This document shows, piece after piece, positions 7,314 through 63,935 of a stretch of 64,000 nucleotides of DNA. Location of the stretch: positions 1,364,001 to 1,428,000 of the forward strand of contig NC_088806.1 in NCBI RefSeq assembly GCF_011386835.1. The letters are read 5' to 3'. The translations under genes were made by a program, and so were the position numbers. How positions within the stretch are numbered: position 1 is the first letter of the stretch; the number at the start of each line of letters is the position of its first letter. This stretch comes from Chrysemys picta bellii (lineage: Eukaryota). The notes below the pieces were generated by a model. That model did no database searches, had not been told where the DNA came from, and saw only the letters and a program-made list of their open reading frames with translations.

Positions 7314-7315
7314 GT

Positions 7316-12473: not shown

Positions 12474-12659
12474 TTGGTGAGCTAGTGGTGCTCCCAAGTG
12501 CTGTGTACACATCCCCTCTCCCCCTAAAGTGAGCAGGGCTGAGACAGGAGCCCAGGGAGCTCCCCCAACCCATGGCCCCCCCCCACACAGCTCCCCTCAC
12601 ACCCCTGCACTAGCATAGGGAAAAGGGGCTCAGTTGGCGTGACCCCTTCAGCCCTCGGG

Positions 12660-12780
12660 CTGGCAGCGTGGGCTAGCGGGCATGGCCTGAGATTCGGGCT
12701 GCCCAGATTCTCTTCCCAGCTCAGCCACTGACCTGCTAGGCAAGTCCCGGCACCTCCGTGCCTCAGTTTCCCCACCCCAC
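12660..12780 (+). mobile_element. Degenerate MIR/CORE-SINE-like copy
   Basis: CCCAGATTCTCTTCCCAGCTCAGCCACTGAC...GGCAAGTC...GTGCCTCAGTTTCCCC resembles the MIR head and core. Confidence 0.5.
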
Positions 12781-13399
12781 CCGTGGTCCATCTCGCTGAG
12801 TGAGACCGTAAGCTTTCACGGCAGGGACAGCCCCATGTGTCTGCTGTGCCCGGCCCCATGGGTACCCCAATCTTAGAACTGGACTGAGACCCTCTGAACT
12901 CATGTCCCCCGGGGAATTCCCCCTCAGGCCTGGCCCTGCCCACTTCCCAGCCCGCCTGGTGCCAGCTCTTCGCTCCCGCTCCTGAACTTCGCTCCATGCT
13001 TCGGAGCCCCTGGCAGGCGGGCCGCTGCGCCCTGCGCCAGGCTAAGCCAAGCGCCTCCCGGCCTGGGCCAGGACACCAAGAGCGTCGGCCTCTGGTCCAC
13101 GCCCAGACCTGTTCGGGCAGGGCTCCCCCAGCTCCCGCCAGCCCCGCGTCATACCATCTCATCAAGAGGGAGCTGGGAGCCAGGACTCCTGGGTTCTCTC
13201 CCCGGCTCGGGGAGGGGAGTGGGGGCTGGGGGTTCAGAGCGGGGGGGGGGGCTGGGAGCCAGGACTCATGGGTTCTCTCCCGGGCTCTGGGAGGGGAGTG
13301 GGGGCTGGTGGTTAGAGCAGGGGGGGCTGGGAGCCAGGACTCCTGGGTTCTGTCCCAGAGGGGAGTGGGGTCTAGTGGGTTAGAGGAGGAGCGATGGCC

Positions 13400-22855: not shown

Positions 22856-24041
22856 GCCCCCATATGGGGCAGCTGCTTGGACTTCCCGGGGGGCCTCTAC
22901 TCCCGAGCTTTCTTGGTATTTTAAACCGTGCACAAAACAGGGGCCCCAATGGGGATCCGGGCTTGGACCCCCTTCCTGTGGAGTGGGGTGACCCCCAGCT
23001 CCCTTTTGGGCCTGCAGCCCCTGCCCCGGGGGATTATGTGCCAAAGCTCCAGGGCTGGGGGACTTGTGGTGTCACATCTTTGCAGGGTGGGGTGTGTGTG
23101 GGGGGGTCTTTTGCACAGCTCAGGGTGTGAGGGGCATAGAGGGGGGGAACCGCTTCTCTCCCCAGTCCCAGAGGGCAGTAGGGGCTGGTGGGTTAGAGCA
23201 GCGGGGGCTGGGAGCCAGGACTCCTGGGTTCTCTCCCCGGCTCTGGGAGGGGAGTGGAAGCCGGGGGGTTAGAAACAGGCACAGTGGGGGTGGGAGCCAG
23301 GACTCCTGGGTTCCCAGCAGGGTGGGGGAGCCCAGCCCTGAAGCAAACCGGCCACCCTTCCCCCTCCGGGGCTTCAGCCTTGAGCCGGCTCTGCAGCCGG
23401 TGCTTCTGGCCGGCTGGCTGTAAACACTGCGGCCGGGCGACATTCCTGCCTGGGCCTGGGCCCCGATCCTGGACTCCCCCCGGGGGCGCCCGCCCCACTT
23501 CACACCCGCTGTTAGGATGTGGGAGCCAGCCGCCGCCCCCTCGCCCCATTTCATGGCCCCGGCAGCGGGACCGGGGGCAGGCCCACGCTGTCTAGGGCAA
23601 AGGTGGGGTAGAGACCCGCGCTGCCCCCTCGGCTGCTGAGAGCCGCTCCCCTGCGGCTGGCCCCCCCCCCCCCCCCCCCCCCTCCCCCAGGCCAGGCTGG
23701 TGAAATTTAAGGGCTCTAAACTCCATTTTCACCTGAATCCCCCCCCCAGCAGGCTCAGCGGGGCTAGCGCCTGGGCGGGTGCTTTGACCGCCCCATGGGG
23801 TCCCCCCAGCCCCGCTGCCTCAGCTGAATAACGACATGAAGCTGGGAGCCTGTCACTCTCCGGGCTGGGCCAGAGAAATGGGGCTGTCTTGCCCACGTGT
23901 AGCCCAGGCTAGAAGCGTGTGGTTGCGACCTGGGAGCAGTGGGGAGATGGGGCTACCACAGCCGGGGGGCTTTACCCCTAACCCCATAGGGTATAGCCCA
24001 TCCGTTGGACTCAGCCCAAGGCCCATGTCTGTCCTGCCAAA

Positions 24042-25605: not shown

Positions 25606-26362
25606 GGGGGGGGGGGGGCGGTTAAGAAGAGTTGGTTGGCAGCGCCAAGGTTCTTCCCTGGAAAGTTGGGAGCTGCTCAGCTCCGGGCTGCCCCCCATGC
25701 CAGGCACAGCACACCCCCCCCCCCCCCCAACTGGAGCTTTGCAGACCCTGCCCCCCCACCTCAAGCACCTTAGACAGCTGGGAGGTGGGAAACCAGCCTC
25801 TCCATGCACAAGGACCAGAATAGAACCCAGGTGTCCTGACCCCCCAGCCCAGCACCCAACCCCTAGGCCTGACTGCCCCAGAGCCAGCCTCCATCTCCCT
25901 GCTGGTGGAACACATGGCTGCAGGGATAGGCAGGAAGCCAGTCCTGGGGTGCCCCATTGCACTGGGGCCAGGGGGGCCAGACCCCACCCCCCAACAGACA
26001 GGAGTAGAGGTGGGATTCCCCCCCCAAGGCAGGATCCCTGGGGCCGGAGCTCTGGCAGATCCCTGGTCAGCTGTTCATGCCCCTCCCTGCACCATGACTC
26101 AGGCGCTGCTGTGTACTAAGAGGGTGTGCGGCTGTGTGCGGCTCTCCTGCCAGCCTGGAGTGTGTGCGCGGGGGGGGGGGGGGAAGAATCCAAGGGCAGG
26201 AACCTCCCAGGCTGCACCCTCCCCGAGCTGGGGAGAGAACCCAGGAGTCCTGGCTCCCAGGCCCCCCTGCTCTAACCCACCAGCCCCATAACCCAGGCGT
26301 CTGAGCACCCCCTGAGCAGACACTAGACACAGATACGCCTTGAGAATTATTCAAATTTCCTT

Positions 26363-26675: not shown

Positions 26676-29600
26676 TCAATACTGCGAGCGTCTCAAGTGA
26701 TTGGCCATCTCGAAGCATTTCTTGTTCACGCAGCCCCCATGAATGCCCTCTTTGCCCATGACCAGCACTATCGCTGCAGGGGGGAGAGAGAAAAGAGGGT
26801 TGAGGGGCCCCCCAGGCTACCCACTGCCCCCTCCCCACCACAGGCTGGGGATGGAGGAAGACGCTGGTCTCATGGCAAAGGCCGGATGGGCACCTGGGAT
26901 CTGATCCACTCAGGTAACCCCTACACCAGCACCTACAGGGAACCCAGGAGTCCTGGATCCCACCTCTAACCCCCATTAGACCCCACTTCCCTCCCAGAGC
27001 TGAGGAGAGAACCCAGGAGTCCTGGCTTCCATTCCCAGACAGCAGACCCCAATCCCCGATTCCCAGCGTGCCCCCCCCACCCCCCAAGGGGAAGGGAGGG
27101 AACCCAGGCGTCCTGCTGCCCCCCCCACCCTTGCAGCTGTTCATGAAGCCCGGCCAGTTATCCAGGGATGCGGGGCTGAAGCAGCTAGATCCGGGGCCAG
27201 CTGCTGTGGTGCCCCGGCGCAGGGAAAGGGGTCAGGCCTCGGCTGTGCAAGCAGCAGCTGCTGGGAGGGAACACAGCCCTGCTGGCTTTGGGTGGGGACG
27301 GGGGAAGCGAGGGCCAGACAGGCAGCCCCAGCTGCAGGAGATGGGGAGGCTGGCTGGACCCCACTCCCCTCCCAGAGCCGGGGAGAGAACCCAGGAGTCC
27401 GGGCTCCAGCCCCCCTGTTCCAACCCACCAGCCCCCACTCCCCTCCCCAGCTCTGGGAGGGAATCCAAGAGTCCTGGTTCCCATTCCCAGACAGCAGACC
27501 CCAGCCCCTGATTCCCAGCGCCCCCCCTGCCAGGGCAAGGGTGAGGACCCAGGTGTTCGGCACTCACTCTTGTTGGTCATGCAGACTGCAATGTTGTAGG
27601 TGGGGGTCCCGCCCGTGCTCTTGGTCCGCAGGTCCATGGTGAACTCCCCTTCCACGTGCAGACTGTCCCGAATCACCGAGCACTTCTGGCCCCCGAGCGT
27701 CAGCCCATTGACGAACATGCTGCTACGGTCCTTGGCCACCAGCGCGTTCACCTCAGCCGGCTGGGGAGGGGGAGAGGTCAGGGGTAACACTGGACAGGCT
27801 AGGGGAACCCTGCCCCCCACCTCTTCTGGCACCAGGAAGAGAACCCAGGAGTCCTGGCTCCCTGCCCCCCCTGCTCTAACCACCAGCCCCCGCTCCCCTC
27901 CCAGAGCTGGGGAGAGAACCCAGGAGTCCTGCTCCCAGCCCCCTGCTACCCCCAGCCCCCCCTCCCGAACCCACCAGCCCCCCCTCCCCGCACTGGGGAG
28001 AGAACCCAGGAGCCCCCAAGCAGCTGCTTTCCATGGGATGGGGGTGCAGCAGCTGGGCCCAGAACAGCTGTCCGAGCTCACAAGCCCCCCTTCTATTCCC
28101 CACCAGGAGACACCTGCCCCCCACTCCCCATCTGGGGGCAATCCAGACATGCGGGGGGAGGGGGGGGGGGGAAATCAGCCCCACTGGGGGCAGAGTCTGG
28201 ATTCACACTGGTCATCAATGGGCATTAAGGGCCCTGGATTCATGCCCCCAAATCTCCATCCCCCACTGCAGCCTTGGGGGGCGGGGAAACGGGGGGGAAC
28301 CAGATCCTCCTCTCCCCCCCCCGTCAAGACCAGTCTCCTCCCCCTGCCCTGCAGTTGGCGGGCAGCAACCCCCCCATTCAACCAGTCCACATGGCCCCCC
28401 CAGGCTCCTAGATTTTCATAGTGCCCCCAGCAGTCTGGCCCAGAGGCAGCGGGAAGGGGAGGTTCCCCTCCTCCCCCAGTTTGTTGGGGGGGAGGAGAGA
28501 ATTGAACCCCCAATTTCACCCTCTTCCTCTAGGGGTCAGGTGGGCTGGGCTGTGTCACCACCCCCCAAACTTCCCCTTCTTAAGAACTTCCTGTCTCAGA
28601 CAGACACCCCCCCAGCCCCTCCCACCTGCAGGGTCAGTCCCCCCCAGATATCTAGATTCCCCCCCCCCCCAAATGAAGATGCTTATTTTCAGGGGGATGG
28701 ACAGGACAAGGACTTCCGCATTCTTGATTGATTTCCTCTATCGGCCTCCCGGCCCCTCCCCCCCGCCTTACCAAACTTCCCTCCTATCTGCACGCAGCCC
28801 CCCTCCCCCCCTCCAGTTTCCATAGGAAACCGACAGCCCTGTAATGGGGGTGTTGAGGTTTGAGACCTCTTCCTCCCCCCACCTCTGTCCCTAAGCCGGG
28901 GGGGGGGGGGGGAGAGAGACCCCCCCCCCCAGGGGACACAATGGGGCAGGACCAGGTGGAGTTTGGGGAGGGGTACAGGGGGTTGCTGAGCCCAAGAATA
29001 AGGGGGGGCTCACTGGATGTCCCCATCACCCCGAGAATAGATATGGGGGGCAGCCCCACCTTGCAAACTGCGGGAAGGTCCAGAGTATAACCCACAACCC
29101 CTCCCAGAGCTGGGGAGAGAACCCAGCCCCCCTGCTCTAACCCACCAGCCCCCACTGCCCTCCAGAGACTGGGAAGAGAACCCAGGAGTCCAGGAAGAGA
29201 CAGGATATTAAGGGGGGGGGTCCCCCATGGATGTTACAGGCTTTGGCAAACCCCAGCCCTACTTTTATCAGCCCCCGCCCAGATACAAGACCAGCACCGT
29301 GCCCCACTGCACCTGGGCCCGGCCACCTGCCAGAATCCACCTGGATGAGCGCCTCTCCCTGGATGAGCGCCTCTCCCTCCCTCCCGTACCGGTATAAAGT
29401 TCTGCAGACACTAGAGAAAAGAGGGGGTGCAGAGGGGTCCCAATACATGAGCAGCAGGTCCCTGGCCCAACCTAGGGGGCAGAGACTGGGAGTCCTGGGG
29501 GCAATGGGGAGGGAACGGAGAAAGGGGGGGAAGCGTCTGTCCCCCGTATTCTCCAACCTGGTGCTTTTCACCCCCTGCCAATCGGGGGGCAGCCTCACAC

Positions 29601-35454: not shown

Positions 35455-36790
35455 CTCGGGGGGGGGGGGGGTTAGAGCAGGGGGGCCTGGGAGCCAGAAC
35501 TCCTGGGTTCTCTCCCCGGCTCTGGGAGGGGAGTGGGGGCTGGTGGGTTAGAGCAGGAGGGGCTGGGAGCCAGGACTCCTGGGTTCTCTCCCCGGCTCTG
35601 GGAGGGGAGTGGGGGCTGGTGGGTTAGAGCAGGGGGGCCTGGGAGCCAGAACTCCTGGGTTCTCTCCCCGGCTCTGGGAGGGGAGTGGGGGCTGGTAGGT
35701 TAGAGCAGGAGGGGCTGGGAGCCAGGACTCCTGGGTTCTCTCCCCGGCTCTGGGAGGGGAGTGGGGGCTGGTGGGTTAGAGCAGGGGGGGCTGGGAGCCA
35801 GGACTCCTGGGTTCTCTCCCTGGCTCTGGGAGGGGAGTGGGGGCTGGTGGGTTAGAGCAGGGGGGGCTGGGAGCCAGGACTCCTGGGTTCTCTCCCCGGC
35901 TCTGGGAGGGGAGTGGGGGCTGGTGGGGAAGGGGTGGGTGTCCCTGATGCCTAGAGCATGTGACAGGGGGGTGGCGTTCATCCCTTCTCCCCCACCCCCG
36001 GTCCTACACCACTCCCCGGGCCAGGGCCTCTGCCTCCTGCCCCTAACTCTGGGCCCCCAGGGATTCTGGGGGGGGCCCCCCCAGGATTTTGTGGCGACAT
36101 AAGTAATGGGGCAGGAGCGGGAAGGCGTCGAGGGCACCGCAGGGCAACCAGCGCTGACGGGTCCCTGACTCGCTGGCTGGGGAACTAAGGGTCTCATCAC
36201 CTGGGGAATGGGGCAGGGGAGCCTCTCGGGGAGCTGCCCAGGGATTCGGGCCCCGGGGCCGGTCAGGCAGCGAGAGCCCCGGCAGCCCCACTGCAGAAGT
36301 GTCCTTAGGAAACCACTTCCCCCCTCCACAGCTCAGCCTGGCTGCTCTGGGAGGCTCTAGTGAGTCAGAGCAGGGGGGGCTGGGGGCCAGGACTCCTGGG
36401 TTCTCTCCCCCGGCTCTGGGAGGGGAGTGGGGGCTGGTGGGTTAGAGCAGGGGGGGGGAGGAGCCAGGACGCCTGGGTTCTCTCCCTGGCTCTGGGTGGG
36501 GAGTAGGGGCTGGTGGTTAGAGCAGGGGGGGGGGGCTGGGAGCCAGGACTCCTGGGTTCTCGCCCTGGCGCTGGGAGCAGGGTGGGGGCTGGTGGGTCAG
36601 AGCAGGGGAGGCTGGGAGCCAGGACTCCTGGGTTCTCTCCCCGGCGCTGGGAGCGGGGTGGGGGCTGGTGGGTCAGAGCAGTGGGGGCTGGGAGCCAGGA
36701 CTCCTGGGTTCCCTCCCGGCTCTGGGAGGGGAGGAGGCGGGGGGACTGGGAGCCAGGACTCCTGGGTTCTCTCCCCAGCGCTGGGAACAG
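35455..36790 (+). repeat. Satellite A arrays (35455-35930 and 36365-36790)
   Basis: About 6 copies in each. Confidence 0.9.
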
Positions 36791-37560: not shown

Positions 37561-39135
37561 CAGCATTAAGGAATTAATTTTGCCCGGGAATAATGCTTCT
37601 ATCCTAAAAAGAAGAAGGTGGATTTCCAGACATGGCCACTAGGCAGCGCCCCTGCTCCTGAAAGCCGGCTGGGGCGGATACACATTGCAGATATTCAGTT
37701 AAATGGGCCCCAGGCCTGTGGTGGAAGAGAACCCAGGAGTCCTGGCTCCCAGCCCGCCCTGCTCTAACCCACCAGCCCCCACTCCCCTCCCAGAGACGGG
37801 GAGAGAACCCAGGAGTCCTGGCTCCCAGCCACCCCTGCTCTAACCCACCAGCCCCCACTCCCCTCCCAGAGACGGGGAGAGAACCCAGGAGTCCTGGCTC
37901 CCAGCCCCCCCGTTCTAACCCACCAAACAGGGCAGCGTGATGCATTCAGGGCGCAGGTTCTCAGTGGGGCTGGTGCTTATGGATGGAGACCCCTGGACCT
38001 CTGCATCCCAGCAGCCGGGACGGGGACCTTCCCACACGCGTTATGTGAGGAGAGGGTCTCAGGTTGCCTTGTCCTTTCCCCGCTGCTTGGAATGGGCGCC
38101 CTGGAGCTCTGACCTTTAGCGAACTCGCCGGGGGGCTAAATATAGGGCTGGAGAGAAAGTCCAAAGGGCCCCGGCTGTCTGGAGAGGTGGGGTGGGGGTG
38201 GGGATCCCCTTGCCCCCATAGGAGTGAGCAACGGGGAAAGACCAGCCCCTTGGTGGGGGGCTGGGTCATGCGAGGCCCCATGGCCCATTCCTGCCCCCCG
38301 AACCAGTCAGTCCCTGCCCTGGTGGGAGCTGGCGCCCCCTAGAGGGGCCAGGCTGTGGGGTTCTGGCAGCTGCCCCAGTGGGCACCAAGGGGTGTGTAGG
38401 GCAGAGCGGATGTGCGGATGATGAGGGTCAAATCCCACCTGCTTCCTTGTCCGCACCAGGCCCCCGTCTCCCGCCCCTCGCTGACCCACAGAATCTTGCC
38501 ATGGTCGGCCAGGTACAGGGCGACCCCCGTCCCCACCCCACTGCCCCACAAGGGAACCTTCCTGAGGGACCCATAGCTAATAACCTGTCACACAACGGGG
38601 GGGGGGGGGGGAGAGAGTCCCCAAATGACCCAGTGCCTGATTCTCTCCCCGGCTCTGGGAGGGGAGTGGGGGCTGGTGGTTAGAGCAGGGGGAAGCGGAA
38701 GCCAGGACTCCTGGGTTCTCTCCCCGGCTCTGGGAGGGGAGTGGGGGCTGGTGGGTTAGAGCAGGGGGGCTGGGAGCCAGGACTCCTGGGTTCTCCCCCT
38801 GGCTCTGGGATGGGGGGTGGGGACTGGTGGGTTAGAGCAGTTGGGGCTGGGAGCCAGGACTCCTGGGTTCTCTCCCCGGCTCTGGGAGGGGAGTGGGGGC
38901 TGGTGGGTTAGAGCAGCGGGGCTGTGAGCCAGGACTCCTGGGTTCTCCCCCCGGCTCTGGCGTGTGTGGGGGGGTGCTGTGCGTGAGGGACGCACGTGGG
39001 GGATTGTTCACGCGATTGCATATTTGTGCAGGTGCCAATGGCCCGTCTGGGGGTTGGTCTGTCCCCACACAGGCAGGGCACTTACAGACAGTCCCTAACT
39101 GGCCTGGGTGGGCGGAGGATGCCCGGGACCTCGGG

Positions 39136-40503: not shown

Positions 40504-40780
40504 CCCAGGGTGTGTGTGCGTGGAGGTGTGAATGTTAAAGGGGTTGGACATGATTTGGATTGGATAGAGGGCCCGGGGTGAGTGGGGATGGGAGCCAGGA
40601 CTCCTGGGTTCTCTCCCCGGCTCTGGGAGGGGAGTTGGGGCTGGTGGGTTAGAGCAGGGGGGCTGGGAGCCAGGACTCCTGGGTTCTCTCCCCCGCTCTG
40701 GGAGGGGGTGTCTGTGTATGAGGGGGACAAGCCTTGGGCAGGTGCTGTTTCGAGCCCCCTCTTTTTTTCTCCCGCCAGCC

Positions 40781-46262
<5,482 letters not shown>

Positions 46263-46438: not shown

Positions 46439-46923
46439 GGCACCTGGGACACAGCGGCTGGGTGTGGTTCTTTCCCAGGGGCCCGGACGCCTGGGTTCAG
46501 TCCCAGCTCATGGGGGGCTGCTGGGTCAGAGCAGGGGGGCTGGGAGCCAGGACTCCTGGGTTCTCTCCCTGGCTCTGGGAGAGGAGTGGGGGCGGGTGGT
46601 TTAGAGCAGGGGGGGCTGGGAGCCAGGACTCCTGGGTTCTCTCCCCGGCTCTGGGAGGGGAAGGGGATGCAAGGGGGGAGTGACAGAGGAGTTCTGTCCC
46701 CCCCAAACGGGAGCAGTGGAGGCCGTGGGGGGGATCAGGGAGTGTCTCCCACAGAGACCCCTGGCAGCCTGCCCCTAGCGCGGCAGGCGGGAGGGGGAAT
46801 CTCCAATGGCTGCAGTACGGGGCACCTGACACACAGCTGCGCCCAGCCCCGGTCACACAGAGTTGTTCCACGACCCCAGCCAGGCAGGAGGAGCCGGGTC
46901 GATCATGATTAAACAGAGACGGG

Positions 46924-47827: not shown

Positions 47828-50800
47828 CTAGGAGGTCCCGACCCCGCCAGGCCCCTCGTCTTCACTCTGCCGCAACCGCTTCTTCGCCCGGATCTCGTTC
47901 ATGGCCTCCTCAATGGAGCGCGTGTCCCGCTTGTTGGCCACGGGAACTGGACGGAAGAGACAAGGGTGAACCCAGGAGTCCGGGCTCCCAGCCCCCCCGC
48001 TGTCATCCACCAGCCCCCACTCCTCTCCCAGCGCTGGGGAGAGAACCCAGGAGTCCTGGCTCCCAGCCCCCCCTGCTCTAACCACCAGCCCCCACTCCCC
48101 TCCCAGCGCCGGGGAGAGAACCCAGGAGTCCTGGCTCCCAGCCCCCCCTGCTCTAACCACCAGCCCCCACTCCCCTCCCAGCGCCGGGGAGAGAACCCAG
48201 GAGTCCTGGCTCCCAGCCCCCCTGCTCTAACCACCAGCCCCCACTCCCCTCCCAGCGCCGGGGAGAGAACCCAGGCGTCCGGGCCGGCGCTCACCGCAGC
48301 CGTAGGCCTTATTGGCCTGCATGGTGTGGGCGGCGTCCTTGGCGGCCTCCTTGCCGATGAGGTGACTGTATTTGTCCTTGTAGTCGGTGTTGGGGTTCAC
48401 CACGGCGGGGCCCCTCAGCGCCTCCTGCTCCGCCTCCCTCTGAGCCAGCTCCTGGGGGGAGGAGTGGGGGTGTGAGACGGGGGGGGGGGGAGACACAAGG
48501 GGACATGCCCCCAGCCCCGCCCACCCATGCTGGTAGGACCCACCCACCCAAAGATACGCCCCCTACAGTGAGGGAGGTGAGACCTCAGCCCCGCCCACCC
48601 AGAGAAAGACACGCCCCCTACAGCGAGGGAGGCGAGACCTCAGCCCCGCCCACCCAGAGAAAGACACGCCCCCTACAGCGAGGGAGGTGAGACCCTGTCC
48701 ATGGGGAAGACCCCCCCTCCCTCCCCACAGTCCTGCCCACGCCAAGACACACAGGAAACCCCCCAGGATCCCCCCCAGCACAGCCTGTGGGGGGCCCCAC
48801 GCACCTTCAGGCGGCGTTTCTCCTCGGCCCGTTGTGGGTCCCACTCCTCCCCGCAGCGATAGGCCTCCAGCTCCTCGTCCGATGGGGCGAACTCCTGGGG
48901 GGCAGGGGGCAGAGCATGAGCCACCCCACGGCCCCGAGGGCTTCCCACACGCTGCCCCCACCCGAGCCCCAGCCCCACAGCGCGAGGGGGCCAAGACTCC
49001 TGGGTTCTCTCCCCGGCGCTGGGAGGGGAGTGGGGGCTGGTGGGTTAGAGCAGGGGGCCTGGGAGCCAGGACTCCTGGGTTCTCTCCCCATCTCTGGGAT
49101 GGGAGGGCAGTTGGGGGCTGGTGGGTTAGAGCAAGGGGGGCTGGGAGCCAGGATGCCTGGGTTCTCCCCCAGCTCTGGGAGGGCGGGGGGCGCTCACCTT
49201 CTTAAAGATCATGACGTAACGACTCTCCTCATCGTCACCAAAGGAGAAGGACGTCAGACCAGCCACTTCCACCACGTCGTGCCTGGGACGCGAGCGAGGG
49301 GAGAACTCGATTTACTGACTCACGGAGCAAACGTTCCAGGGGCCAGACCCACAGACCCCTCGCCCGGCGCTGAGACGCGCCCACCTCTGGGGCGGGGCGG
49401 CCGGTTACCCAGGGACCTCTCGCCCGGCGCTGAGATGCGCCCACCTCTGGGGCGGGGCGGCCGGTTACCCGGGGACCCCTCGCCCGGCGCTGAGACGCGC
49501 CCACCTCTGGGGTGAGGCAGCCGGTTACCCGGGGACCCCTCGCCCGGCGCTGAGACGCGCCCACCTCTGGGGCGGGGCGGCCAGTTACCCGGGGACCCCT
49601 CGCCCGGCGCTGAGATGCGCCCACCTCTGGGGCGGGGCGGCCGGTTACCCGGGGACCCCTCGCCCGGCGCTGAGCCGCGCCCACCTCTGGGGTGAGGCGG
49701 CCGGTTACCCGGGGACCCCTCGCCCGGCGCTGAGATCCCCCCACCCATGCGCGGCTCCCCCGCCCCCCGCCCAGAGGCTCACAGGATGCTGCGTTCAAGC
49801 TTGTTCATGGGCTGAAATTTCTTTTTGGTCTGCGAGCTGTCCTGGATGAACTCAGACACGTCCTTCTCCATCTGCACGGGAGACGGAAGGAAAGCTCAGG
49901 GGGGCGGGGAATGGGGCAGGGGCCTGTCCCCTCTAGGGGGCGCCGGCTCCCCCCCGGCCCCAGGGCTGGCTCTGTGGGTCACTCACCCTCTTTCTGAACT
50001 CCACCTTCTGCCGCTTCTCCTGCTCCTGCAGTTTCTTCAGCCGGGCGGCTTGTTCTGCAGGGGCGAGAGAACCAGCAGCTCAGGGTCTGGGGGGCCCCGT
50101 GTGCGGGGCTGGGAGCCCGGACGTCTGGGTTCTCTCCCCGGCTCTGGGAGGGTGGGGGGCTGGTGGGTTAGAGCAGGGGGGGCTGGGAGCCAGAACTCCT
50201 GGGTTCTCTCACCGGCTCTGGGAGGGGAGTGGGGGCTGGTGGGTTAGAGCAGGGGGGCTGGGAGCCAGGACTCCTGGGTTCTCTCCCCGGCTCTGGGAGG
50301 GGAGTGGGGGCTGGTGGGTTAGAGCAGGGGGGGCTGGGAGCCAGGACTCCTGGGTTCTCTCCCCGGCTCTGGAGGGGAGTGGGGGCTGGTGGGTTAGAGC
50401 AGGGGGGGCTGGGAGCCAGGACTCCTGGGTTCTCTCCCCGGCTCCGGGAGGGGAGTGGGGGCTGGTGGGTTAGAGCGGGGGGGCTGGGAGCCAGGACTCC
50501 TGGGTTCTCTCCCCGGCTCTGGGAGGGGAGTGGGGGCTGGTGGGTTAGAGCAGGGGGGGCTGGGAGCCAGGACTCCTGGGTTCTCTCCCCGGCTCTGGGA
50601 GGGGTGGGGGGCTGGTGGGTTAGAGCAGGGGGGGGCTGGGAGCCAGAACTCCTGGGTTCTCTCCCCGGCTCTGGGAGGGGAGTGGGGGCTGGTGGGTTAG
50701 AGCAGGGGGGCTGGGAGCCAGGACTCCTGGGTTCTCTCCCCGGCTCCGGGAGGGGAGTGGGGGCTGGTGGGTTAGAGCAGGGGGGCTGGGAGCCAGGACT

Positions 50801-53800
50801 CCTGGGTTCTCTCCCCGGCTCTGGGAGGGGAGTGGGGGCTGGTGGGTTAGAGCAGGGGGGGCTGGGAGCCAGGACTCCTGGGTTCTCTCCCCGGCTCTGG
50901 GAGGGGAGTGGGGCTGGTGGGTTAGAGCAGGGGGGGCTGGGAGCCAGGACGTCTGGGTTCTCTCCCTGGCTCTGGGAGGGGAGTGGGGGCTGGTGGTTAG
51001 AGCAGGGGGGCTGGGAGCCAGGACTCCTGGGTTCTCTCCCCGGCTCTGGGAGGGGAGTGGGGGCTGGTGGGTTAGAGCAGGGGGGGCTGGGAGCCAGGAC
51101 GTCTGGGTTCTCTCCCTGGCTCTGGGAGGGGAGTGGGGGCTGGTGGTTAGAGCAGGGGGGCTGGGAGCCAGGACTCCTGGGTTCTCTCCCCGGCTCTGGG
51201 AGGGGAGCGGGGGCTGGTGGGTTAGAGGAGGAGGGGGCTGCGGTCCCCTTGGAGAAGTGCCCTTCCCCCTTGTGCTCCCCCCGGTAAGATGGGGTTACCC
51301 CTGCTCTCTGGGGGTCGTGGGGTCCCCTGCTGATGTTGCGAGCTCCGGCCCCAGGGTGGGGCAGGGCAGGGCAGGGCAGGGTCTGTCTCTCCTGCCCTCG
51401 CTCCGTCCATAAGGCCCCCCGTAGCGACCGGTGGAGTCCTGGGCCTGACGCTGGCTCTGCGGGGGGGTCCTGGGGTCGGCGCAGAGCCGGGAACATTCAG
51501 CGCCGCCGGCCTGACCGTGAGCACCAGGCGGGTTGGGTCCTATGTACGGCCCGGTCCGTACCGCGCCCCTACCCCACCCCCATGTAGTTATAGCCCGGTC
51601 CGTAGCGCGCCCCTCCCCCAGCCCCCGACTAGTTATAGCCCGGTCCGTACCGCGCCCCTCCCCCAGCCCCCGTCTACCCTGTTTCCCCGAAAATAAGACA
51701 GTGTCTTATATTAATTTTTGCTCCCAAAGATGCGCTAGGTCTTATTTTCAGGGGATGTCTTATTTTTCAGAAATGAAAAATGCCTTATTATCGGGGAGGT
51801 CTTATTATCGGGGGATGCCTTATATTACAACGAGAGGCAAAACTGTAAGTAGGCCTTATTTTCGGAGGATGTCTTATTTTCGGGAAACAGGGTAGTTATA
51901 GCCCAGTCCGTAACGCGCCCCTCCCCCACCCCCGTCTAGTTATAGCCCGGCCCGTACCGCGCCCCTCCCCCGGCCCCCGTCTAGTTATAGCCCGGCCCGT
52001 ACCGCGCCCTCCCCCGGCCCCCGTCTAGTTATAGCCCGGCCCGTACCGCGCCCCTCCCCTGGCCCCTGTCTAGTTATAGCCCGGCCCGTACCGCGCCCTC
52101 CCCCGGCCCCCGTCTAGTTATAGCCCAGTCCGTAACGCGCCCCTCCCCCACCCCCGTCTAGTTATAGCCCGGCCCGTACCGCGCCCCTCCCCCGGCCCCC
52201 GTCTAGTTATAGCCCGGCCCGTACCGCGCCCCTCCCCCGGCCCCCGTCTAGTTATAGCCCGGCCCGTACCGCGCCCCTCCCCTGGCCCCTGTCTAGTTAT
52301 AGCCCGGCCCGTACCGCGCCCCTCCCCCGGCCCCCGTCTAGTTATAGCCCGGCCCGTACCGCGCCCCTCCCCTGGCCCCTGTCTAGTTATAGCCCGGTCC
52401 GTACCGCGCCCCTCCCCCAGCCCCGTCTAGTTATAGCCCGGTCCGTACCGCGCCCCTCCCCCGGCCCCCGACTAGTTATAGCCCGGCCCGTACCGCGCCC
52501 CTCCCCCGGCCCCCGTCTAGTTATAGCCCGGCCCGTACCGCGCCCCTCCCCTGGCCCTGTCTAGTTATAGCCCGGTCCGTACCGCGCCCTTCCCCCAGCC
52601 CCTGTCTAGTTATAGCCCGGTCCGTACCGCGCCCCTCCCCCACCCCGTCTAGTTATAGCCCGGTCCGTACCGCGCCCCTCCCCCACCCCCGTCTAGTTAT
52701 AGCCCGGCCCGTACCGCGCCCCTCCCCCGGCCCCCGTCTAGTTATAGCCCGGTCCGTACTGCGCCCCTCCCCTGGCCCCTGTCTAGTTATAGCCCGGCCT
52801 GTACCGCGCCCCTCCCCCAACCCCCGTCTAGTTATAGCCCGGTCCGTACCGCGCCCCTCCCCCAGCCCCCGACTAGTTATAGCCCGGTCCGTACCGCGCC
52901 CCTCCCCCACCCCCATGTAGTTATAGCTCAGTCAGTACCGCGCCCCTCCCCAGCCCCCGACTAGTTATAGCCCGGCCCGTACCGCGCCCCTCCCCGGCCC
53001 CCGTCTAGTTATAGCCCGGCCCGTACCGCGCCCCTCCCCTGGCCCCTGTCTAGTTATAGCCCGGTCCGTACCGCGCCCCTCCCCCACCCCCGTCTAGTTA
53101 TAGCCCGGCCCGTACCGCGCCCCTCCCCCGGCCCCCGTCTAGTTATAGCCCCGGCCTGTACCGCGCCCCTCCCCCAACCCCCGTCTAGTTATAGCCCGGT
53201 CCGTACCGCGCCCCTCCCCCAGCCCCCGACTAGTTATAGCCCGGTCCGTACCGCGCCCCTCCCCCACCCCCATGTAGTTATAGCTCGGTCAGTACCGCGC
53301 CCCTGCCCCAGCCCCCGACTAGTTATAGCCCGGTCCGTACCGCGCCCCTCCCCCAGCCCCCGTGTCTCTGTATAGCCTGGTCCCTATAGCACCCCTCCCC
53401 CGAGGTCAGGGCCATATGGAGACGGGGGGGGGGGGTGATGGCAGGAGCTCCCGGGGGGTCAGGGCCATGGTGTGCTGGGCAGGGAATAGTGGGTGGGGGT
53501 CAGAGTGTGGGAGTGGGGCCATGGGGTACAGGGCGGGGCTCTGTCCCGGTGGGCGGGGCTAGGGGCGGGGCTTGGCACCGGGGGGGGCACAGGGCGGGGT
53601 TCTGTCTCGGTGGGCGGGGCTAGGGGCGGTGGGCGGGGTTCTGTCTCGGTGGCGGGGCTAAGGGCGCTGGGCGGGGTTCTGTCCCGGGGGCGGGGCTAAG
53701 GGCGGGGTTCTGTCCCGGCGGGCGGGGCTAGGGGCGGTGGGCGGGGTTCTGTCCCGGCGGGCGGGCTAGGGCGGGGTTCTGACCCGGTGGGCGGGGCTAG

Positions 53801-58186: not shown

Positions 58187-59471
58187 TTGTTTAGGGTCCC
58201 CCCCACCAATATATTACAACTATGTACACAAGGTGTGTGTGTCTGTGTGCATGAGGGGGCGGGCAGGGGTGGGGGGGACACAGGCTTTATACAGCAAGCA
58301 GGGAACATGGGGGGGCAACCTGGGAGGCTCCACCCCCCCTGCTCCCCCGATAGCACATCTGTAATATATACACAGCGGCCCCAGCGAGGGGGAAATGACC
58401 CACTGAAGGGCTCCCGGGGGCCGACCCAGACCAGCGGGAGGGTCTGGCGAGGGCAGGGATAGGGGGCTCGGGGCGTTAGGAGGGCTGGGCTCAGGGTCCC
58501 TTTAAGAAGAGGCCCAGCAAGGCTGTGGGGAGCAGGGACCCAGAGGCTGGGTGCTGCAAAGCCCCATAGGATGTAGTTCTCAGCCCCACCCCCGGCCCTG
58601 TGGGGTGGGGGGTGTGTGTGTGGGTGAAGACCCTGCAGCTGGGGACAGGTCAAGCACATAAGGCTGAATGAGTACTTAAAGGGCCCTGTTTGCAGAGGGC
58701 TGGGAATGAGCCAGCAAGAGAACCCAGGAGTCCTGGCTCCCAGCCCCCCGGCTGTAACCCACCAGCCCCCACTCCCCTCCCAGAGCCGGGGAGAGAACCC
58801 AGGAGTCCTGGCTCCCAGCCCCCTGCGCTAACCCACCAGCCCCCACTCCCCTCCCAGAACCGGGGAGAGAACCCAGGAGTCCTGGCTCCCAGCTCCCCCT
58901 GCTCTAACCACCAGCCCCCACTCCTCTCCCAGAGCCGGGGAGAGAACCCAGGAGTCCTGGCTCCCAGCCCCCGCTGCTCTAACCCACCAGCCCCCACTCC
59001 TCTCCCAGAGCCAGGGAGAGAACCCAGGAGTCCTGGCTCCCAGCCTGGGCGGGGGGTAACTTGGCACAAAGATCCGGTGAAATGAAGGGGGCAGCGGAGG
59101 GATATGGGGGTACAACAGATGGTACCTCAGTTCTGAAGAGACATTCCCCCCCCCACCCCGCATGGCTGCATCATCCCCTTCAGGCCAACTCAGGTGAGCC
59201 CCCTTGGCGTGAGGAGCGAGCCAGGACCCCCTCCAATCTGCTTCCCTCCAGCCACTCTCTATTGCACAATTGTTAAGACAGGGGGGGCCCTGCACCCCCC
59301 CCAGGGGAGGCCACGCTCCGTCGCCGCCGGGGCTTAAGACTCCATCATCACAGTTTCAGAAGGGGAGCGAAGGTGGGGGCGGCCGGCCAGCCGGCCCCGG
59401 ATGCCTGGGTTCCCGGTGTGGCTGCCCCAAGCTTTGGCGGGCCGCAGGCGGGGGGGGCAGAGGGGGCAGCG

Positions 59472-62400
59472 CTAAGTGGCCAGACCTCGCTTCTGTAAAC
59501 TTTCCACCTCTTTGCTTTGCTTTAGTTCCTTCATCCTGTGGGGGGCACAGAGAAATAGGCGGTAAGGTGGAGGGTTCCCAATGACCCCCCCAAACTTCAA
59601 TCCCACCCCATGGGGTGTCCCCCACACCCCGATTACAGCCTGGGAGCACGGATGCCCATGCACCTTCCTCCTTTCATGCCACCTCATCCACCAGCCCCTC
59701 CAATGAGCCAGATTCCCACACCCAGCGCATCCTGCCCCATCCCTCTGCGGGGGGCGCTCCCACCTCCATCCTCGACTGCCCCCGCGTCTCCCCCCGGCCG
59801 CCATACCTGTGCCGGCAGCGACGCAGGAACCGCATGATCTTACGGGCGGCCTGGTCCTGCTTCTTCGTGAGGAAAGTGCCCCTGGGGAGAGACAAAAGAA
59901 GAAGCGAAGGTGGAGCAGGGCAGATGGTCATAGAGAGACCCCTTGCTGATGCGGCCAGCTCTGGGGCGGGGCGGCCGGTTACCCAGCGACCCCTCGCCCG
60001 GCGCTGAGATGTGCCCACCTCTGGGGCAGGGCGGCCGGTTACCCAGGGACCCCTCGCCCGGCGCTGAGACGCAGCCACCTCTGGGGCGGGGCGGCCGGTT
60101 ACCCCAGTGACCCCTCGCCCGGTGCTGAGATGCACCCACCTCTGGGGCGAGGTGGCCCGAGCCAATGCCAACTAGATCTGTGGGATCTTTTCATAGCCAG
60201 AGAGGTGACAGGAGCCAGTGGGGATAGGGAGCAGCCCCCCCCCCACACTAACCCACCAGCTCCCACCCCCCTCCCAGAGCAGGGGAGAGAACCCAGGAGT
60301 CCTGGCACCCAGCCCCCCCTGCTCTGACCCATCAGCCCCCAGTTCCCTCCCAGAGCCGGGGAGAGACCCCAGGAGTCCTGGCTCCCAGCCCCCCCTGCTC
60401 TGACCCAGCAGCCCCCACTCCCCTCCCAGAGCCAGGAGAGAACCCAGGAGTCCCTGGCTCCCAGCCCCCCCTGCTCTAACCCACCAGCTCCCCACTCCCC
60501 TCCCAGAGCCAGGGAGAGAACCCAGGAGTCCTGGCTCCCAGCCCCCACTGCTCTAACCCACCAGCCCCTACTCCCCTCCTAGAGCCGGGGAGAGAACCCA
60601 GGAGTCCTGGCTCCCAGCCCCCGCTGCTCTAACCCACCAGCCCCCCACTCCCCTCCCAGAGCCGGGGGAACCCAGGAGTCCAGGCCCCTACTTCATCTTG
60701 TGCTGCATGGTGGCGGAGGCCCGGTGGCCCTGTTTCAGCTTCTCGTACTCCTTGTAGCTGCGGTAGTACTGCTGGATCAGCACGGCGGCCCGGCGGCTCT
60801 GCTGGAACTTCTTCTGCTCGTAGTAGCTGCGGAACTTGCTCTGGATCAGAATGGCCGCCTGCGTCATCTTCTTATACAGCGCGTACTGCGGGGGAGCAGC
60901 GGGGTCAGCGGGGGAACCAGAGCCCTCCCCTCCCAGAGCCGGGGGGAACCCAGGAGTCCTGGCTCCCACCCCCCTGCTCTAACCCGCCAGCCCCCACTGC
61001 CCTCCCAGAGCCGGGGAGAACCCAGGAGTCCTGGCTCCCACCCCCCTGCTCTAACCCACCAGCCCCCACTGCCCTCCCAGAGCCGGGGAGAGAACCCAGG
61101 AGTCCTGGCTCCCAGCCCCCCTGCTCTAACCACCAGCCCCCACTGCCCTCCCAGAGCCGGGGAGAGAACCCAGGAGTCCTGGCTCCCAGCCCCCCTGCTC
61201 TAACCCACCAGCCCCCACTCCCCTCCCAGAGCCGGGGGGAACCCAGGAGTCCTGGCTCCCACCCCCTGCTCTAACCATCAGCCCCCACTGCCCTCCCAGA
61301 GCTGGGGGGAACCCAGGAGTCCTGGCTCCCACCCCCTGCTCTAACCACCAGTCCCCTCTCCCCTCCCAGAGCCGGGGGGAACCCAGGAGTCCTGGCTCCC
61401 AGCGCCCCCGCTTGCTTGCATATATATATTTGGTTTATTGTAAGAGGTTTACAGATGTATATTAACGTGCGTTCAGCTGTAACGCAAGGCCATATGCTGT
61501 ATGTTAAGGTAAGGCAAAGTCAGCATCTATGTCAGGGGCTCTCCCCTAGACAGACAGAGAACTGCACAGGGGGCTGCACGTCTGTACCCTCAGATTGAAC
61601 CGCTACCCCACCAGGAAAGAACCGAAAGAACAGGGAGAACAACAGTAGCGTGTGTGTATGATCGACTCGTCATGAATAGGTCTGTACATGTCAGCGACAC
61701 GCCAGCCTACGGAGTAAGGGGACCCTGACGTTTCTGTGGATGGGGAGCGGAGGAGGAAGGATTTCCGGCCCCTGTGGGGCCCCACCTCGCGAGAGAGGCT
61801 GGATTGGTTTTTCTTAAGCTCCCTATGTTCCAAGGGGCCGCGGCTGTGCTTGGCTTCCCAGAGCTTTTGCTCTTCATTTTGGGGGGTCGGTTTGGATCTT
61901 ACGGTGAAGCGAGTTAAGTAAACTGGATATTCGTGTCGCTAGCTCTGAGCTCCAGCTCCTCCTCCGCTCTGCGCCTCTCGCTCAGGAACAGAGGAGACTG
62001 AACGGCCAGGGGCGAGGCTGGGCCTGTCTCTCCCCACCGGGTGACCAGGGAAGGGGGGGAGTCGATGAACCAAAGCTTTGGAGCCTATAGTAGCCTAGTC
62101 CCACATGGACCTTCTGACTAGCAGGAAAACAAAGGTAACTTTGTAAGTGGGAAATGTCCCCATTTCATTACTACTTCATTGTATCTGACTCAAAGGTCTT
62201 TAAGGCCGTATCGGTCTCAGTGGGAGCTTCCTGGCACAGCCCCGCGGGCTCCTTTGTAAACTCTGTGGAGCCTGATTCAGGACAAGAACCTTATTATCTT
62301 CGAATCAAACGGACTGGCGAGCCCAAAACCCGCATTATCCAACTTAATAATATTAACCTTATACATCAGGCAACACCTCCCAGAGCCGGGGAGAGAACCC

Positions 62401-63935
62401 AGGCGTCCTGGCTCCCAGCCCGCCCAGCCCCCACTCCTCTCCCAGAGCCGGGGAGAGAACCCAGGAGTCCTGGCTCCCAGCCCCCCCCGCTCTAACCCAC
62501 CAGCCCCCACTCCTCTCCCAGAGCCGGGGAGAGAACCCAGGAGTCCTGGCTCCCAGCCCCCCCCTGCTCTAACCCACCAGCCCCCACTCCCCCTCCCCAG
62601 AGCCAGGGGGAGAACCCAGGAGTCCTGGCTCCCAGCCCCACTGCTCTTACCCACCAGCCCCCACTCCCCCTCCAGAGCCGGGGAGAGAACTAGCAGCTCA
62701 CACCCCTCCCTGCAATCAGCGTCCCCCCACATCCACACACCAGCCTGGAGACCCCACCCCACCCCAGCCCCCTATTCCCCACAGGGTCACCCGAGCCCTC
62801 CTGCTTGTTACCTTCAAAGCGATCCACGTGAGCTTGCGAGACAGAGAGAGAAGAGGTATGTTAGTGGGAGTGGGGGGCGCTCCCGGGCCGAGACCCGATG
62901 GACTCGGCTCACATGGGCACCAGGCTACAGCCCAGCTCAGGCTGGCCCACAGCTCCCAGGGCAGCCCCCCACCTTGGGGCCCCGGAAGGGCAGCACAGGG
63001 GGTGGGGGGTCCCCAGCTGGGAGTTACCTGCTTATACTTGCGGTAACATCGCTGGATCACAGCCGCCGCCGTCTCCTGTTGCTCCTTCAGCCGGCGGCCC
63101 TGGGGGGAGAGGGGAGTGAGGGGGGGGCAGAGACAGAGCTGGGGGGGCAGGTCCCTGGCACCCGGGGACGGTGGGATGCGGGGGAGAGGGCTATCCTGTT
63201 GCTGGGCAGGGTGGTAAGGTGAGTGATGCTTGTTGCCATGGCGAATTCCCCGTTGCCAGGGGACCGTACATGGAGATGCCTGTTACCATGGGGAATTTCC
63301 CGTTGCCAGGAGACAGTACAAGAGACATGGAGATGCCTGTTGCCATTGGGAATTCCCCGTTGCCAAGGGATTGTACATGGAGATGCCTGTTGCCATGGGG
63401 AATTCCCAGCTGCTGGGGACCATACATGGAGATGCCTGTTGCCATGGGGAATTTCCCGTTGCCAGGGGACAGTACAAGAGACATGGGGATGCCTGTTGCC
63501 ATGGGGATTGTACATGGAGATGCCTGTTGCCATGGGGAATTCTCAGTTGCCGGCGACCGTACATGGAGATGGCTGTTGCCATGGGGAATTCCCAGTTGCC
63601 AGGGGACCGTACACGGAGATGCCTGTTGCCATGGGGAATTCCCAGTTGCCGGGGAACCAGGCAGCAGCCTAGGGAAAAGTGCAGGATTCCCATAGGCAGA
63701 GGAGGATGGAGGGAGAGGGCGGACGCCCGTTGCCAGGAGGTACCTTGTACTTGCGGAAGGCGGTCTGGATGACGCGGGCGGCCTCATAGAGCTCCCGCTG
63801 CTCGTGGTCGGACAGTGTCAGCAGCGCAAACTCGCTCTCCATCTTCCCGTTGGCCGAGGCGTTGAGGAACTCAGCCCAGCTGGCGGCCGTGGAGGGCGGG
63901 GGCAGCCGGTCGAAGGGCAGCTCCCCGAGCGGGGC
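59472..63935 (-). CDS. CAMTA2: Calmodulin-binding transcription activator 2, 3' exons (IQ motifs); gene continues beyond the window
   Basis: Exons 63935-63744, 63099-63028, 62832-62812 (21-nt LTWIALK), 60885-60692, 59881-59807, 59535-59472: ELYEAARVIQTAFRKYK, AAILIQSKFRSYYEQK, KKQDQAARKIMRFLRRCRHR...GLAT*. Confidence 0.95.
60250..61405 (-). repeat. Satellite A arrays flanking a CAMTA2 exon (60250-60690, 60925-61405; also 58720-59045 and 62376-62695)
   Basis: C-rich strand on +. Confidence 0.9.
61413..62375 (-). mobile_element. Putative solo LTR (~960 bp) in CAMTA2 intron
   Basis: Non-satellite island; minus strand TGTTGCC...GCAAGCA with AATAAA near the 3' end; no TSD found. Confidence 0.5.
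63230..63660 (+). repeat. Minisatellite L array (~50-bp unit) in CAMTA2 intron
   Basis: GGAGATGCCTGTTGCCATGGGGAATTCCCAGTTGCCAGGGGACCGTACAT repeats. Confidence 0.95.

What the first reader, a model, noticed from the sequence alone, without database searches (positions are those of the whole stretch)
50105..51235. Pervasive 75-bp satellite looks like a tandemly amplified tRNA-derived SINE head (A-box/B-box units)
Seen: one ~75-nt unit forms more than 25 arrays in this window. It reads GGTGGGTTAGAGCA-GGGGGGCTGGGAGCC-AGGACTC-CTGGGTTCTCTCCCCGG-CTCTGGG. This parallels a tRNA/MIR head: D-loop/A-box-like GGTTAGAGC, then a T-arm-like stem CTGGG/CCCGG around a B-box-like GGTTCTCTCCC. A MIR-like copy at 12660-12780 has the comparable CCCAGATTCTCTTCCCAGCTCAG, and at about 21960-22110 a satellite unit lies just upstream of the MIR-core GTGCCTCAGTTTCCCC. 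Established: MIR/CORE-SINE heads are tRNA-derived, and B-boxes can recruit TFIIIC with insulator activity. Inference: a SINE head was converted into a spreading satellite that may supply TFIIIC/Pol III sites in gene-dense chromosome regions. The B-box lacks the GA of GGTTCGA, so it may be inactive.
Basis: partly seen in the sequence, partly recalled or inferred. Interest (0 to 1): 0.7.

Follow-up and report, generated by a model that had tools for sequence, protein, structure and literature searches.

The report
SINE-head minisatellite filling turtle introns
A 76-base repeat copied from the front end of an old SINE jumping gene sits at 35 places in this turtle gene cluster, mostly inside short introns and mostly in one orientation; it shows no sign of still being a Pol III/TFIIIC site.

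Summary
A 75-76-bp unit (e.g. window:50296-50371:+) occurs at 35 loci on both strands, 27 of them with at least 2 units. It covers 15-16% of the window. The longest array is 50105-51240, with 15 copies at 94% identity.

The SINE origin is supported by physical continuity, not by motif statistics. Two arrays (10846-11243 minus, 21964-22047 plus) run in register into a CORE/MIR-type SINE body carrying GTGCCTCAGTTTCCCC. tRNA models, ARAGORN and A/B-box matching give nothing above chance.

The Pol III/TFIIIC idea is not supported. None of 105 full units has a canonical B-box, and the unit's single CpG decays as methylated DNA does.

New here:
- Arrays are star-like copies, 92% identical between loci and 95% within. 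Similarity does not depend on distance.
- They grow in place by multi-unit duplications.
- They have no TSDs or shared flanks.
- They fill short introns of the PA/RING, profilin, enolase and IQ-motif genes.
- Their G-rich strand is the coding strand at 18 of 21 securely intronic loci.

This is a new member of a known kind; SINE-derived satellites were described in squamates in 2023. The scan's notes record the same family in other windows of this genome.

The parts
50105..51240 (+). Main array, 15 units. Antisense to the SPAG7-like exon at 49975-50070 (minus strand).
   Evidence: TRF. Internal 150-bp and 226-bp block duplications at 99.3% identity.
10846..11243 (-). Array of 5.2 units whose 3' unit runs into a SINE body.
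10745..10845 (-). CORE/MIR-type SINE body continuous with the array; core motif at 10789-10805.
   Evidence: 0 of 2000 shuffles against the other bodies.
21964..22047 (+). 1.1 units running into a SINE body.
22048..22140 (+). CORE/MIR-type SINE body with the exact core 16-mer at 22093-22109. It ends at the 3' splice site of the RING exon.
12640..12810 (+). Solo old MIR-like SINE. The body is homologous to the two above; the head is only weakly unit-like.
25813..25886 (-). Old diverged head with the GGTTCTATTC form.
   Evidence: 11 of 2000 shuffles.
9498..9577 (+). Old degenerate unit of about 1.3 copies.
   Evidence: E 9e-7. Present in organisms B and C.
7334..7386 (-). Solo core unit inside the leader/LTR of an LTR retrotransposon. 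Flanked by 14-bp direct repeats at 7322-7335 and 7395-7408.
7864..7911 (-). Partial unit.
13165..13389 (+). Array, 3 units.
14193..14475 (+). Array, 3.7 units.
14663..14987 (+). Array, 4.3 units, in an intron of the PA/RING gene. Starts 7 nt after the donor and ends about 45 nt before the acceptor.
15691..15930 (+). Array, 3.2 units.
16121..17001 (+). Array, about 11 units, with private variants and 96-111-bp higher-order periods.
19113..19913 (+). Array, 10.5 units, with private variants.
20442..20732 (+). Array, 3.8 units. The last unit has the TCTAT form.
20797..20921 (-). 1.6 units, antisense to the host gene (an exception).
22235..22478 (+). Array, 3.2 units. It makes up most (about 80%) of the short intron that follows the RING exon (ends about 22231); the intron ends about 50 nt after the array.
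23154..23313 (+). 2.1 units.
26217..26287 (-). Solo unit downstream of the profilin stop codon.
26937..27131 (-). 2.6 degenerate units, profilin intron.
27359..27556 (-). 2.6 units, profilin intron. Starts 14 nt after the donor.
27809..28015 (-). 2.7 units, intron upstream of the profilin exon.
29091..29194 (-). 1.4 units.
35459..35927 (+). Array, 6 units, 96% identity.
36357..36786 (+). Array, 5.7 units.
37723..37925 (-). 2.7 units, antisense (an exception).
38641..38976 (+). Array, 4.4 units.
40584..40710 (+). 1.7 units.
43259..43467 (+). 2.7 units, enolase intron. The last unit has the TCTAT form and ends about 30 nt before the acceptor.
43725..43807 (+). 1.1 units. Starts 10 nt after an enolase donor.
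45197..45454 (+). 3.4 units. Starts 27 nt after the Enolase_C exon.
46478..46661 (+). 2.4 units.
47968..48284 (-). 4.2 units, SPAG7-like intron, in sense. Runs from 10 nt after the donor to 22 nt before the acceptor.
48986..49194 (+). 2.7 units, antisense to the SPAG7-like gene.
58708..59045 (-). 4.4 units.
60237..60688 (-). 5.9 units. Starts 2 nt after the GT of the IQ-exon donor.
60916..61412 (-). 6.5 units with private deletions. The alignment runs up to the exon boundary at 60915, so its last ~30 nt (GCTGAC, pyrimidine tract, CAG) form the 3' splice region of the IQ exon.
62376..62713 (-). 4.4 units.

Best explanation
This is a dispersed minisatellite family. Its 75-76-bp unit is the tRNA-related head of a CORE/MIR-type SINE, plus a short G-rich joint, repeated head to tail.

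Shown:
- The unit is physically continuous with SINE bodies at two loci.
- Every array is a near-equidistant copy of one consensus.
- Arrays expand in place by one- to three-unit duplications (unequal exchange or slippage).
- They occupy short introns of GC-rich housekeeping genes almost from donor to acceptor.
- Their G-rich strand is usually the coding strand.
- The Pol III promoter boxes are degenerate in every unit.

Inferred:
- The family arose once from a duplicated SINE head and then spread as body-less arrays. The route leaves no TSDs or fixed ends, so DNA-level reinsertion or ectopic repair is more likely than LINE-mediated retroposition.
- The orientation bias reflects purifying selection. 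The C-rich antisense strand would put a branch-point-like CTAAC followed by an 84%-pyrimidine tract and CAG into the pre-mRNA every 76 nt. The sense strand contributes 13 G-triplets per unit.
- I regard the arrays as mostly neutral or tolerated intron filler, not as Pol III or TFIIIC elements.
For: - Abundance and reality.
- Continuity with SINE bodies: alignment A1; core motif hits 10789-10805, 12757-12773 and 22093-22109; body-to-body similarity with 0, 3 and 0 of 2000 dinucleotide shuffles reaching the score.
- Ancestral-looking TCTAT forms in the terminal units at 20716 and 43451 and in the old head at 25818.
- Genome-wide contigs joined to a partial unit read AGTGGTTAGAGCAGGGG in 61 contigs of run X1. 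RNA-library contigs of another organism carry tandem units with a TCTAGTGGTTTGAGC linker.
- In-place growth: within-array identity 95.2% against 91.9% between arrays, with private variants in arrays 16121, 19113, 47968 and 60916; 150-bp and 226-bp blocks duplicated at 99.3%.
- Star-like spread: sequence distance does not track genomic distance (Spearman -0.12, permutation p 0.95); adjacent arrays differ by 8.9% and all pairs by 8.7%.
- No shared flanks and no TSDs above control except at one locus.
- Gene strands by Pfam. Sense orientation at 18 of 21 loci (p 0.0015) or 28 of 32 (p 2e-5), with no GC skew in the non-satellite background.
- Splice-signal asymmetry of the two strands. Arrays abut splice sites.
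- Dead promoter.
Against: - Only 2 of 35 loci retain a SINE body, and no SINE reference library (Dfam/Repbase) could be searched. The family assignment therefore rests on three decayed in-window bodies and on my recollection of the MIR consensus.
- The solo MIR-like head is not significantly unit-like.
- The bodies look about 2-3 times more diverged than the units. So either the arrays were homogenised or overwritten later, or they arrived beside old SINEs.
- The orientation statistic treats loci as independent. At gene level it is 4 of 5, and the largest array is an antisense exception.
- The dispersal mechanism is not shown.
Confidence: 0.7

Rival explanations
1. One reading: the units are arrays of B-box/A-box sites that recruit TFIIIC or Pol III and act as insulators or Pol III genes in gene-dense regions.
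For: The geometry is tRNA-like. A D-arm-like GCTGGTGGGTTAGAGC lies 45 nt before a T-arm-like CTGGG/7-nt loop/CCCGG hairpin (sequence). The units descend from a SINE head.
Against: 0 of 105 units have a canonical B-box; the invariant GA is missing from every unit (TC in most). No tRNA-model hit appears at E<=10 and ARAGORN finds none. The motif matches are no better than shuffles. The unit RNA fold has z -0.14. CpG decay is of the methylated type. The strong sense bias in Pol II introns points to pre-mRNA constraints.
Confidence: 0.06
2. The arrays are themselves mobile. Multimeric head transcripts, or single heads, are retroposed, giving the star-like family and the many unlinked loci.
For: The relationships are star-like and independent of distance. 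The solo unit at 7334-7386 lies inside an LTR retrotransposon between 14-bp direct repeats. Start phases cluster at unit positions 21-37 and end phases at 48-60 or 65-9.
Against: 34 of 35 loci have no TSD above the control distribution. There is no tail and no fixed 3' end. The 14-mer 'TSD' resembles the unit's own linker in inverse orientation, and the two copies are 73 bp apart. The empty-site test with paralogous contigs was inconclusive.
Confidence: 0.15
3. The arrays are selected intron components. G-run arrays on the coding strand would act as intronic splicing enhancers or G4/R-loop-forming elements for short GC-rich introns.
For: Sense bias at 18/21 and 28/32 loci. There are 13 G-triplets and one canonical G4 motif per unit on the sense strand. 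Arrays start 2-15 nt after donors. Other skewed arrays in the window are also G-rich on the coding strand.
Against: Bias can come from selection against the antisense strand alone. Units evolve at about 4% from consensus with ordinary CpG decay. Copy number differs freely between loci. The biggest array is antisense. There is no functional data.
Confidence: 0.15
4. The unit is an unrelated G-rich minisatellite that only happens to lie beside two old SINEs, or SINEs captured it.
For: 33 of 35 loci lack a SINE body. tRNA and box statistics are null. The head of the solo MIR-like copy is not significantly similar.
Against: Of only five core-motif hits in 64 kb, two lie in the same orientation, collinear with and just downstream of the last T-arm-like hairpin of an array. 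Terminal units carry transitional TCTAT forms.
Confidence: 0.08

Closest known systems
SINE-derived satellites (sSat) of squamate reptiles (Vassetzky, Kosushkin, Ryskov 2023, PMC10702118)
   Same: These are tandem repeats made from part of a tRNA-related SINE. There are many loci per genome. Some arrays keep a longer terminal unit that continues into the SINE. Longer arrays are more homogeneous. Growth is attributed to unequal recombination.
   Different: The source is a CORE/MIR-type SINE in a turtle, not Squam1-3. The repeated part is the whole head. Only 2 of 35 loci keep the SINE body. The arrays are short (1-15 units) and sit in euchromatic introns with a strand bias, not preferentially in subtelomeres; chromosome position was not testable here. 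That paper says it is uncertain whether such satellites exist outside squamates.
Human MSR1 minisatellite family of chromosome 19 (Rose et al. 2016, PMC4725990)
   Same: It works alike as a genomic pattern: a short GC-rich minisatellite dispersed in small clusters through promoters and introns of a gene-dense region, with copy-number variation.
   Different: MSR1 has a 36-38-bp unit and a measured effect on promoters that is independent of orientation.
MIR / CORE-SINE heads
   Same: The core motif GTGCCTCAGTTTCC lies downstream of a tRNA-like head with a CTGGG...CCCGG T-arm. Resemblance to the mammalian MIR consensus is from my memory only.
   Different: Here the head is multimerised and mostly detached from the core and tail. 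The B-box GA has been replaced.
tRNA-related tandem families of amphibians (PolIII/TAN, OAX, Rana/polIII, Hy/polIII), as reviewed in PMC10702118
   Same: These are tandem repeats containing a tRNA-like segment.
   Different: Their units are 200-360 bp or more and no SINE link is shown. Some are transcribed by Pol III in vitro, and nothing suggests that here.

Membership tests
SINE-derived satellite (sensu PMC10702118) | Head-to-tail tandem repeats of a SINE segment at multiple loci. | tested here: met
   35 loci, 27 with at least 2 units.
SINE-derived satellite (sensu PMC10702118) | A terminal unit continuing into the remaining SINE sequence. | tested here: met
   Met at 2 of 35 loci (10846-11243 and 21964-22047). 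Absent at the others.
SINE-derived satellite (sensu PMC10702118) | Significant alignment of the unit to the consensus of a named SINE family. | not testable with these tools
   No Dfam/Repbase library is available, and no paper in the library prints the consensus.
CORE-SINE / MIR | Conserved CORE domain. | tested here: met
   The core 16-mer is exact at 22093, with 1 mismatch at 12757 and 3 mismatches at 10789; 5 hits against 0.5 expected. It belongs to the adjoining bodies, not to the unit.
CORE-SINE / MIR | LINE-related 3' tail and TSDs. | tested here: not met
   No TSDs above control at 34 of 35 loci. The tail was not identified.
tRNA gene / type-2 Pol III promoter | tRNA covariance-model or ARAGORN hit. 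| tested here: not met
tRNA gene / type-2 Pol III promoter | Canonical B-box GGTTCGANNCC and A-box TRGCNNAGTGG. | tested here: not met
   0 of 105 units. The best matches have 2 mismatches each, no better than shuffles.
TFIIIC-bound ETC/insulator site | TFIIIC occupancy. | not testable with these tools
   Needs ChIP or CUT&Tag.
MSR1 minisatellite | Sequence similarity to the 36-38-bp MSR1 consensus. | not testable with these tools
   The consensus appears only in a figure of PMC4725990.

The most novel reading that the evidence does not exclude
A SINE head, freed from its SINE, spread like a transposon family by a route that leaves no TSDs. The copies are star-like, unlinked and body-less. It now makes up much of the short introns of GC-rich turtle genes under strand-specific selection. 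The sense copies would supply G-run or G4 arrays that help define these introns, while antisense copies are purged as cryptic 3' splice sites.
Probability: 0.15. Interest if true: 0.65.

Novelty: new member of a known kind. Interest (0 to 1): 0.42.

Why it matters
It extends SINE-derived satellites from squamates to turtles and from subtelomeric arrays to euchromatic introns. It gives a clean case where one can ask how a tandem repeat disperses without transposition hallmarks. It also offers a measurable strand bias that ties a minisatellite to splicing constraints. For annotation, roughly a sixth of this gene cluster, and 39% counting all tandem families, is repeat that will confuse aligners and intron models.

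Tried and rejected
- tRNA identity: ARAGORN, Rfam at gathering threshold and at E<=10 on the array and on two older heads all found nothing.
- RNA fold of one unit: no excess stability.
- A/B-box consensus matching: not above shuffles.
- Composite-element idea (76-bp + 60-bp + 85-bp arrays as one transposon): rejected, because the spacers share no homology.
- Local neighbour-to-neighbour spread: rejected.
- TSD scan: negative except at one ambiguous locus.
- Empty-site test for that locus with contigs of four runs: inconclusive. Contigs stop at 7332-7335 and the listed joints are unit-to-unit.
- SINE-body remnants 3' of the other 33 loci: none above shuffles.
- Literature searches by sequence words and by topic: no turtle report and no printed MIR or MSR1 consensus. 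The alligator/caiman satellitome paper lists no 75-76-bp satellite.
The N run at 18037-18046 was left alone. No human contig was met.

Full report
OBSERVATION

The stretch 50105-51240 is a clean tandem array with period 75/76, 15.1 copies, 94% matches and TRF score 2037. The same unit (a representative copy is window:50296-50371:+) recurs throughout the window.
- nhmmer with one unit finds 140 unit hits in 35 loci on both strands.
- Local alignment to a tandem reference delimits 10,519 bp, 15-16% of the window. 27 loci have at least two units and 8 are solo or partial.
- A 21-nt core pattern with up to 3 mismatches occurs 115 times against 0 in shuffles.
- All tandem families together mask 39% of the window.

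SETTING

The window is GC-rich (60-78% over most of it). Pfam on single exons, given by reference, fixes four gene strands:
- a PA/RING gene on the plus strand (14515-22230);
- profilin on the minus strand (26679-27763);
- enolase on the plus strand (42702-45170);
- an IQ-motif, CAMTA-like gene on the minus strand (60689-60915).

A SPAG7-like exon (49975-50070, minus strand) was recognised only by eye. From memory, this order matches human 17p13.2.

Earlier notes of this scan call the genome a turtle. Run X1 matches 2.4 kb of unique sequence without a difference. Runs of two other organism labels match at 99.5% and 99.0%.

IS IT A SINE HEAD?

Motif and structure statistics do not say so.
- ARAGORN finds no tRNA.
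- Rfam finds nothing at gathering thresholds, and no tRNA-model hit at E<=10 on the array or on two older heads.
- The unit RNA folds no better than shuffles (z -0.14).
- The best B-box and A-box matches have 2 mismatches each. 14% and 99% of composition-matched shuffles reach the thresholds tested (B-box <=2, A-box <=3 mismatches).
- The head of the solo MIR-like copy at 12640-12810 is not significantly unit-like (303 of 2000 shuffles).

What does support the origin is physical continuity. The array 10846-11243 (minus) and the 1.1-unit locus 21964-22047 (plus) both pass, in register after the T-arm-like hairpin, into a sequence that carries the core motif downstream in the same orientation (alignment A1). 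These two bodies and the solo MIR-like body are mutually similar beyond shuffles (0, 3 and 0 of 2000).

Further points:
- Terminal units at 20716 and 43451 and an old head at 25818 keep a GGTTCTAT form, closer to a B-box than the satellite's GGTTCTCT.
- Contigs from the same genome that join a partial unit read AGTGGTTAGAGCAGGGG in 61 cases. RNA-library contigs of another organism carry tandem units with a TCTAGTGGTTTGAGC linker. Less derived variants therefore exist.
- From memory only, the unit aligns well with the first 60 nt or so of the MIR consensus. That is a lead, not a test, because no SINE library or printed consensus was available.

HOW THE ARRAYS BEHAVE

- Units are 95.2% identical within arrays and 91.9% between them. 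Array consensuses are 93-100% identical to the global consensus, yet several arrays carry private variants.
- The main array contains a two-unit block and a three-unit block, each duplicated at 99.3%. Arrays therefore expand in place by unequal exchange or slippage.
- Sequence distance between arrays does not depend on genomic distance (Spearman -0.12, p 0.95). Neighbours are no closer than random pairs. The family is star-like rather than locally spread.
- Flanks share no homology, and the co-occurring 60-bp and 85-bp families are independent.
- Flanking direct repeats do not exceed the control distribution except at 7334-7386.
- Array ends are not fixed. Starts favour unit positions 21-37 and ends favour 48-60 or 65-9, a post hoc description.
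- Only 2 of 35 loci have a SINE body. Those bodies are about 80% alike, whereas units are 92% alike. The arrays are therefore either younger than the SINE insertions or were homogenised after them.

The one TSD-like case is ambiguous.
- It lies in the leader of an LTR retrotransposon (gag-like ORF 6040-6984, protease-like ORF 988-1701).
- The 14-mer resembles the unit's own linker in inverse orientation, and its two copies are 73 bp apart.
- Contigs of paralogous copies stop at the unit edge, so no empty site could be read.
- I only observed this element.

INTRONS AND STRAND

Arrays begin 2-15 nt after 5' splice sites (at 14663, 27556, 43725, 48284 and 60688; at 22235 the alignment starts within the donor itself). 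They end 20-50 nt before 3' splice sites (14987, 22478, 43467, 47968), and at 60916 the array's last ~30 nt form the acceptor region itself. The intron after the RING exon is mostly array (about 80%), and half of the profilin intron is array.

The unit's G-rich strand is the coding strand at 18 of 21 securely intronic loci (p 0.0015), and at 28 of 32 in the wider set (p 2e-5). Non-satellite sequence shows no such skew, and the 60-bp family shows no bias.

The sense strand carries 13 G-triplets and one G4 motif per unit. The antisense strand carries CTAAC followed by an 84%-pyrimidine tract and CAG, which is a textbook 3' splice site every 76 nt. I infer selection against antisense copies.

Caveats: at gene level the count is 4 of 5, and the largest array (the one in the finding) is antisense to the SPAG7-like gene.

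POL III / TFIIIC

None of 105 full units has GGTTCGANNCC; the GA is absent from every unit, and most read TC there. The unit's only CpG is intact in 60% of units and is TG or CA in 30%, against 3.9% divergence at other sites. That is the decay expected of germline-methylated DNA. Together with the null tRNA tests, this makes active Pol III promoters or TFIIIC sites unlikely. Occupancy was not testable.

COMPARISON AND NOVELTY

SINE-derived satellites were described in 56 squamate genomes in 2023. Those authors left open whether they exist elsewhere. I found no turtle report, and the alligator/caiman satellitome paper lists no 75-76-bp satellite.

The pattern also resembles the human chromosome-19 minisatellite MSR1.

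Other first-stage notes and one follow-up in this scan describe the same family in other windows of this genome. This window is therefore not its first sighting. One note names LF-SINE as the source, but the bodies here carry the CORE/MIR motif instead.

VERDICT

The repeat is real. It is a SINE-head-derived dispersed minisatellite and a new member of a known kind. The Pol III/TFIIIC reading is not supported. The sense-strand bias and the TSD-less, star-like dispersal are the parts worth following up.

Noticed in passing
11674-12473, 21203-21835, 34461-35193, 44004-44425, 49341-49746, 59945-60159: A second dispersed minisatellite family with a 60-bp unit at six loci. The flanks are unrelated and there is no orientation bias relative to genes. 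It often lies within a few hundred bp of a 76-bp array.
   Followed up: partly
37224-37528, 44686-44942, 45809-46154, 49894-49974: A third dispersed family with an 84-85-bp unit at four loci.
   Followed up: no
17237-18297, 39274-40394, 41477-42154, 51549-53402: Other strongly GC-skewed intronic arrays (58-, 63-, 45- and 45-bp units) also have their G-rich strand on the coding strand of the surrounding gene. This suggests a general rule for intronic tandem repeats here. The last one depends on the SPAG7-like gene extending that far.
   Followed up: partly
53509-56080 and 56680-57941: A 38-bp array (64 copies) and a 54-bp array lie in the only part of the window with CpG observed/expected of 0.8. 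The region may be a CpG-island-like repeat block between the SPAG7-like and CAMTA-like genes.
   Followed up: no
1-7700 (minus strand): An LTR retrotransposon with a gag-like ORF that resembles a SCAN domain by eye (6040-6984), a zinc-knuckle/protease-like ORF (988-1701) and an integrase-like ORF (53-775). It is highly repeated in all three DNA runs and present in an RNA library of another organism. Observed only.
   Followed up: partly
7322-7335 and 7395-7408: 14-bp perfect direct repeats flank the solo unit at 7334-7386. They may be a TSD, but they resemble the unit's linker in inverse orientation and lie 73 bp apart.
   Followed up: partly
15048-15058: The only canonical B-box match in the window (GGTTCGACGCC) lies inside a coding exon of the PA/RING gene. 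It is a chance match.
   Followed up: yes
20442-20921: Two arrays of opposite orientation face each other across about 65 bp. The unit's palindrome CCAGGACTCCTGG sits where many loci start.
   Followed up: no
18037-18046: A run of 10 N inside the 58-bp array, left untouched.
   Followed up: no
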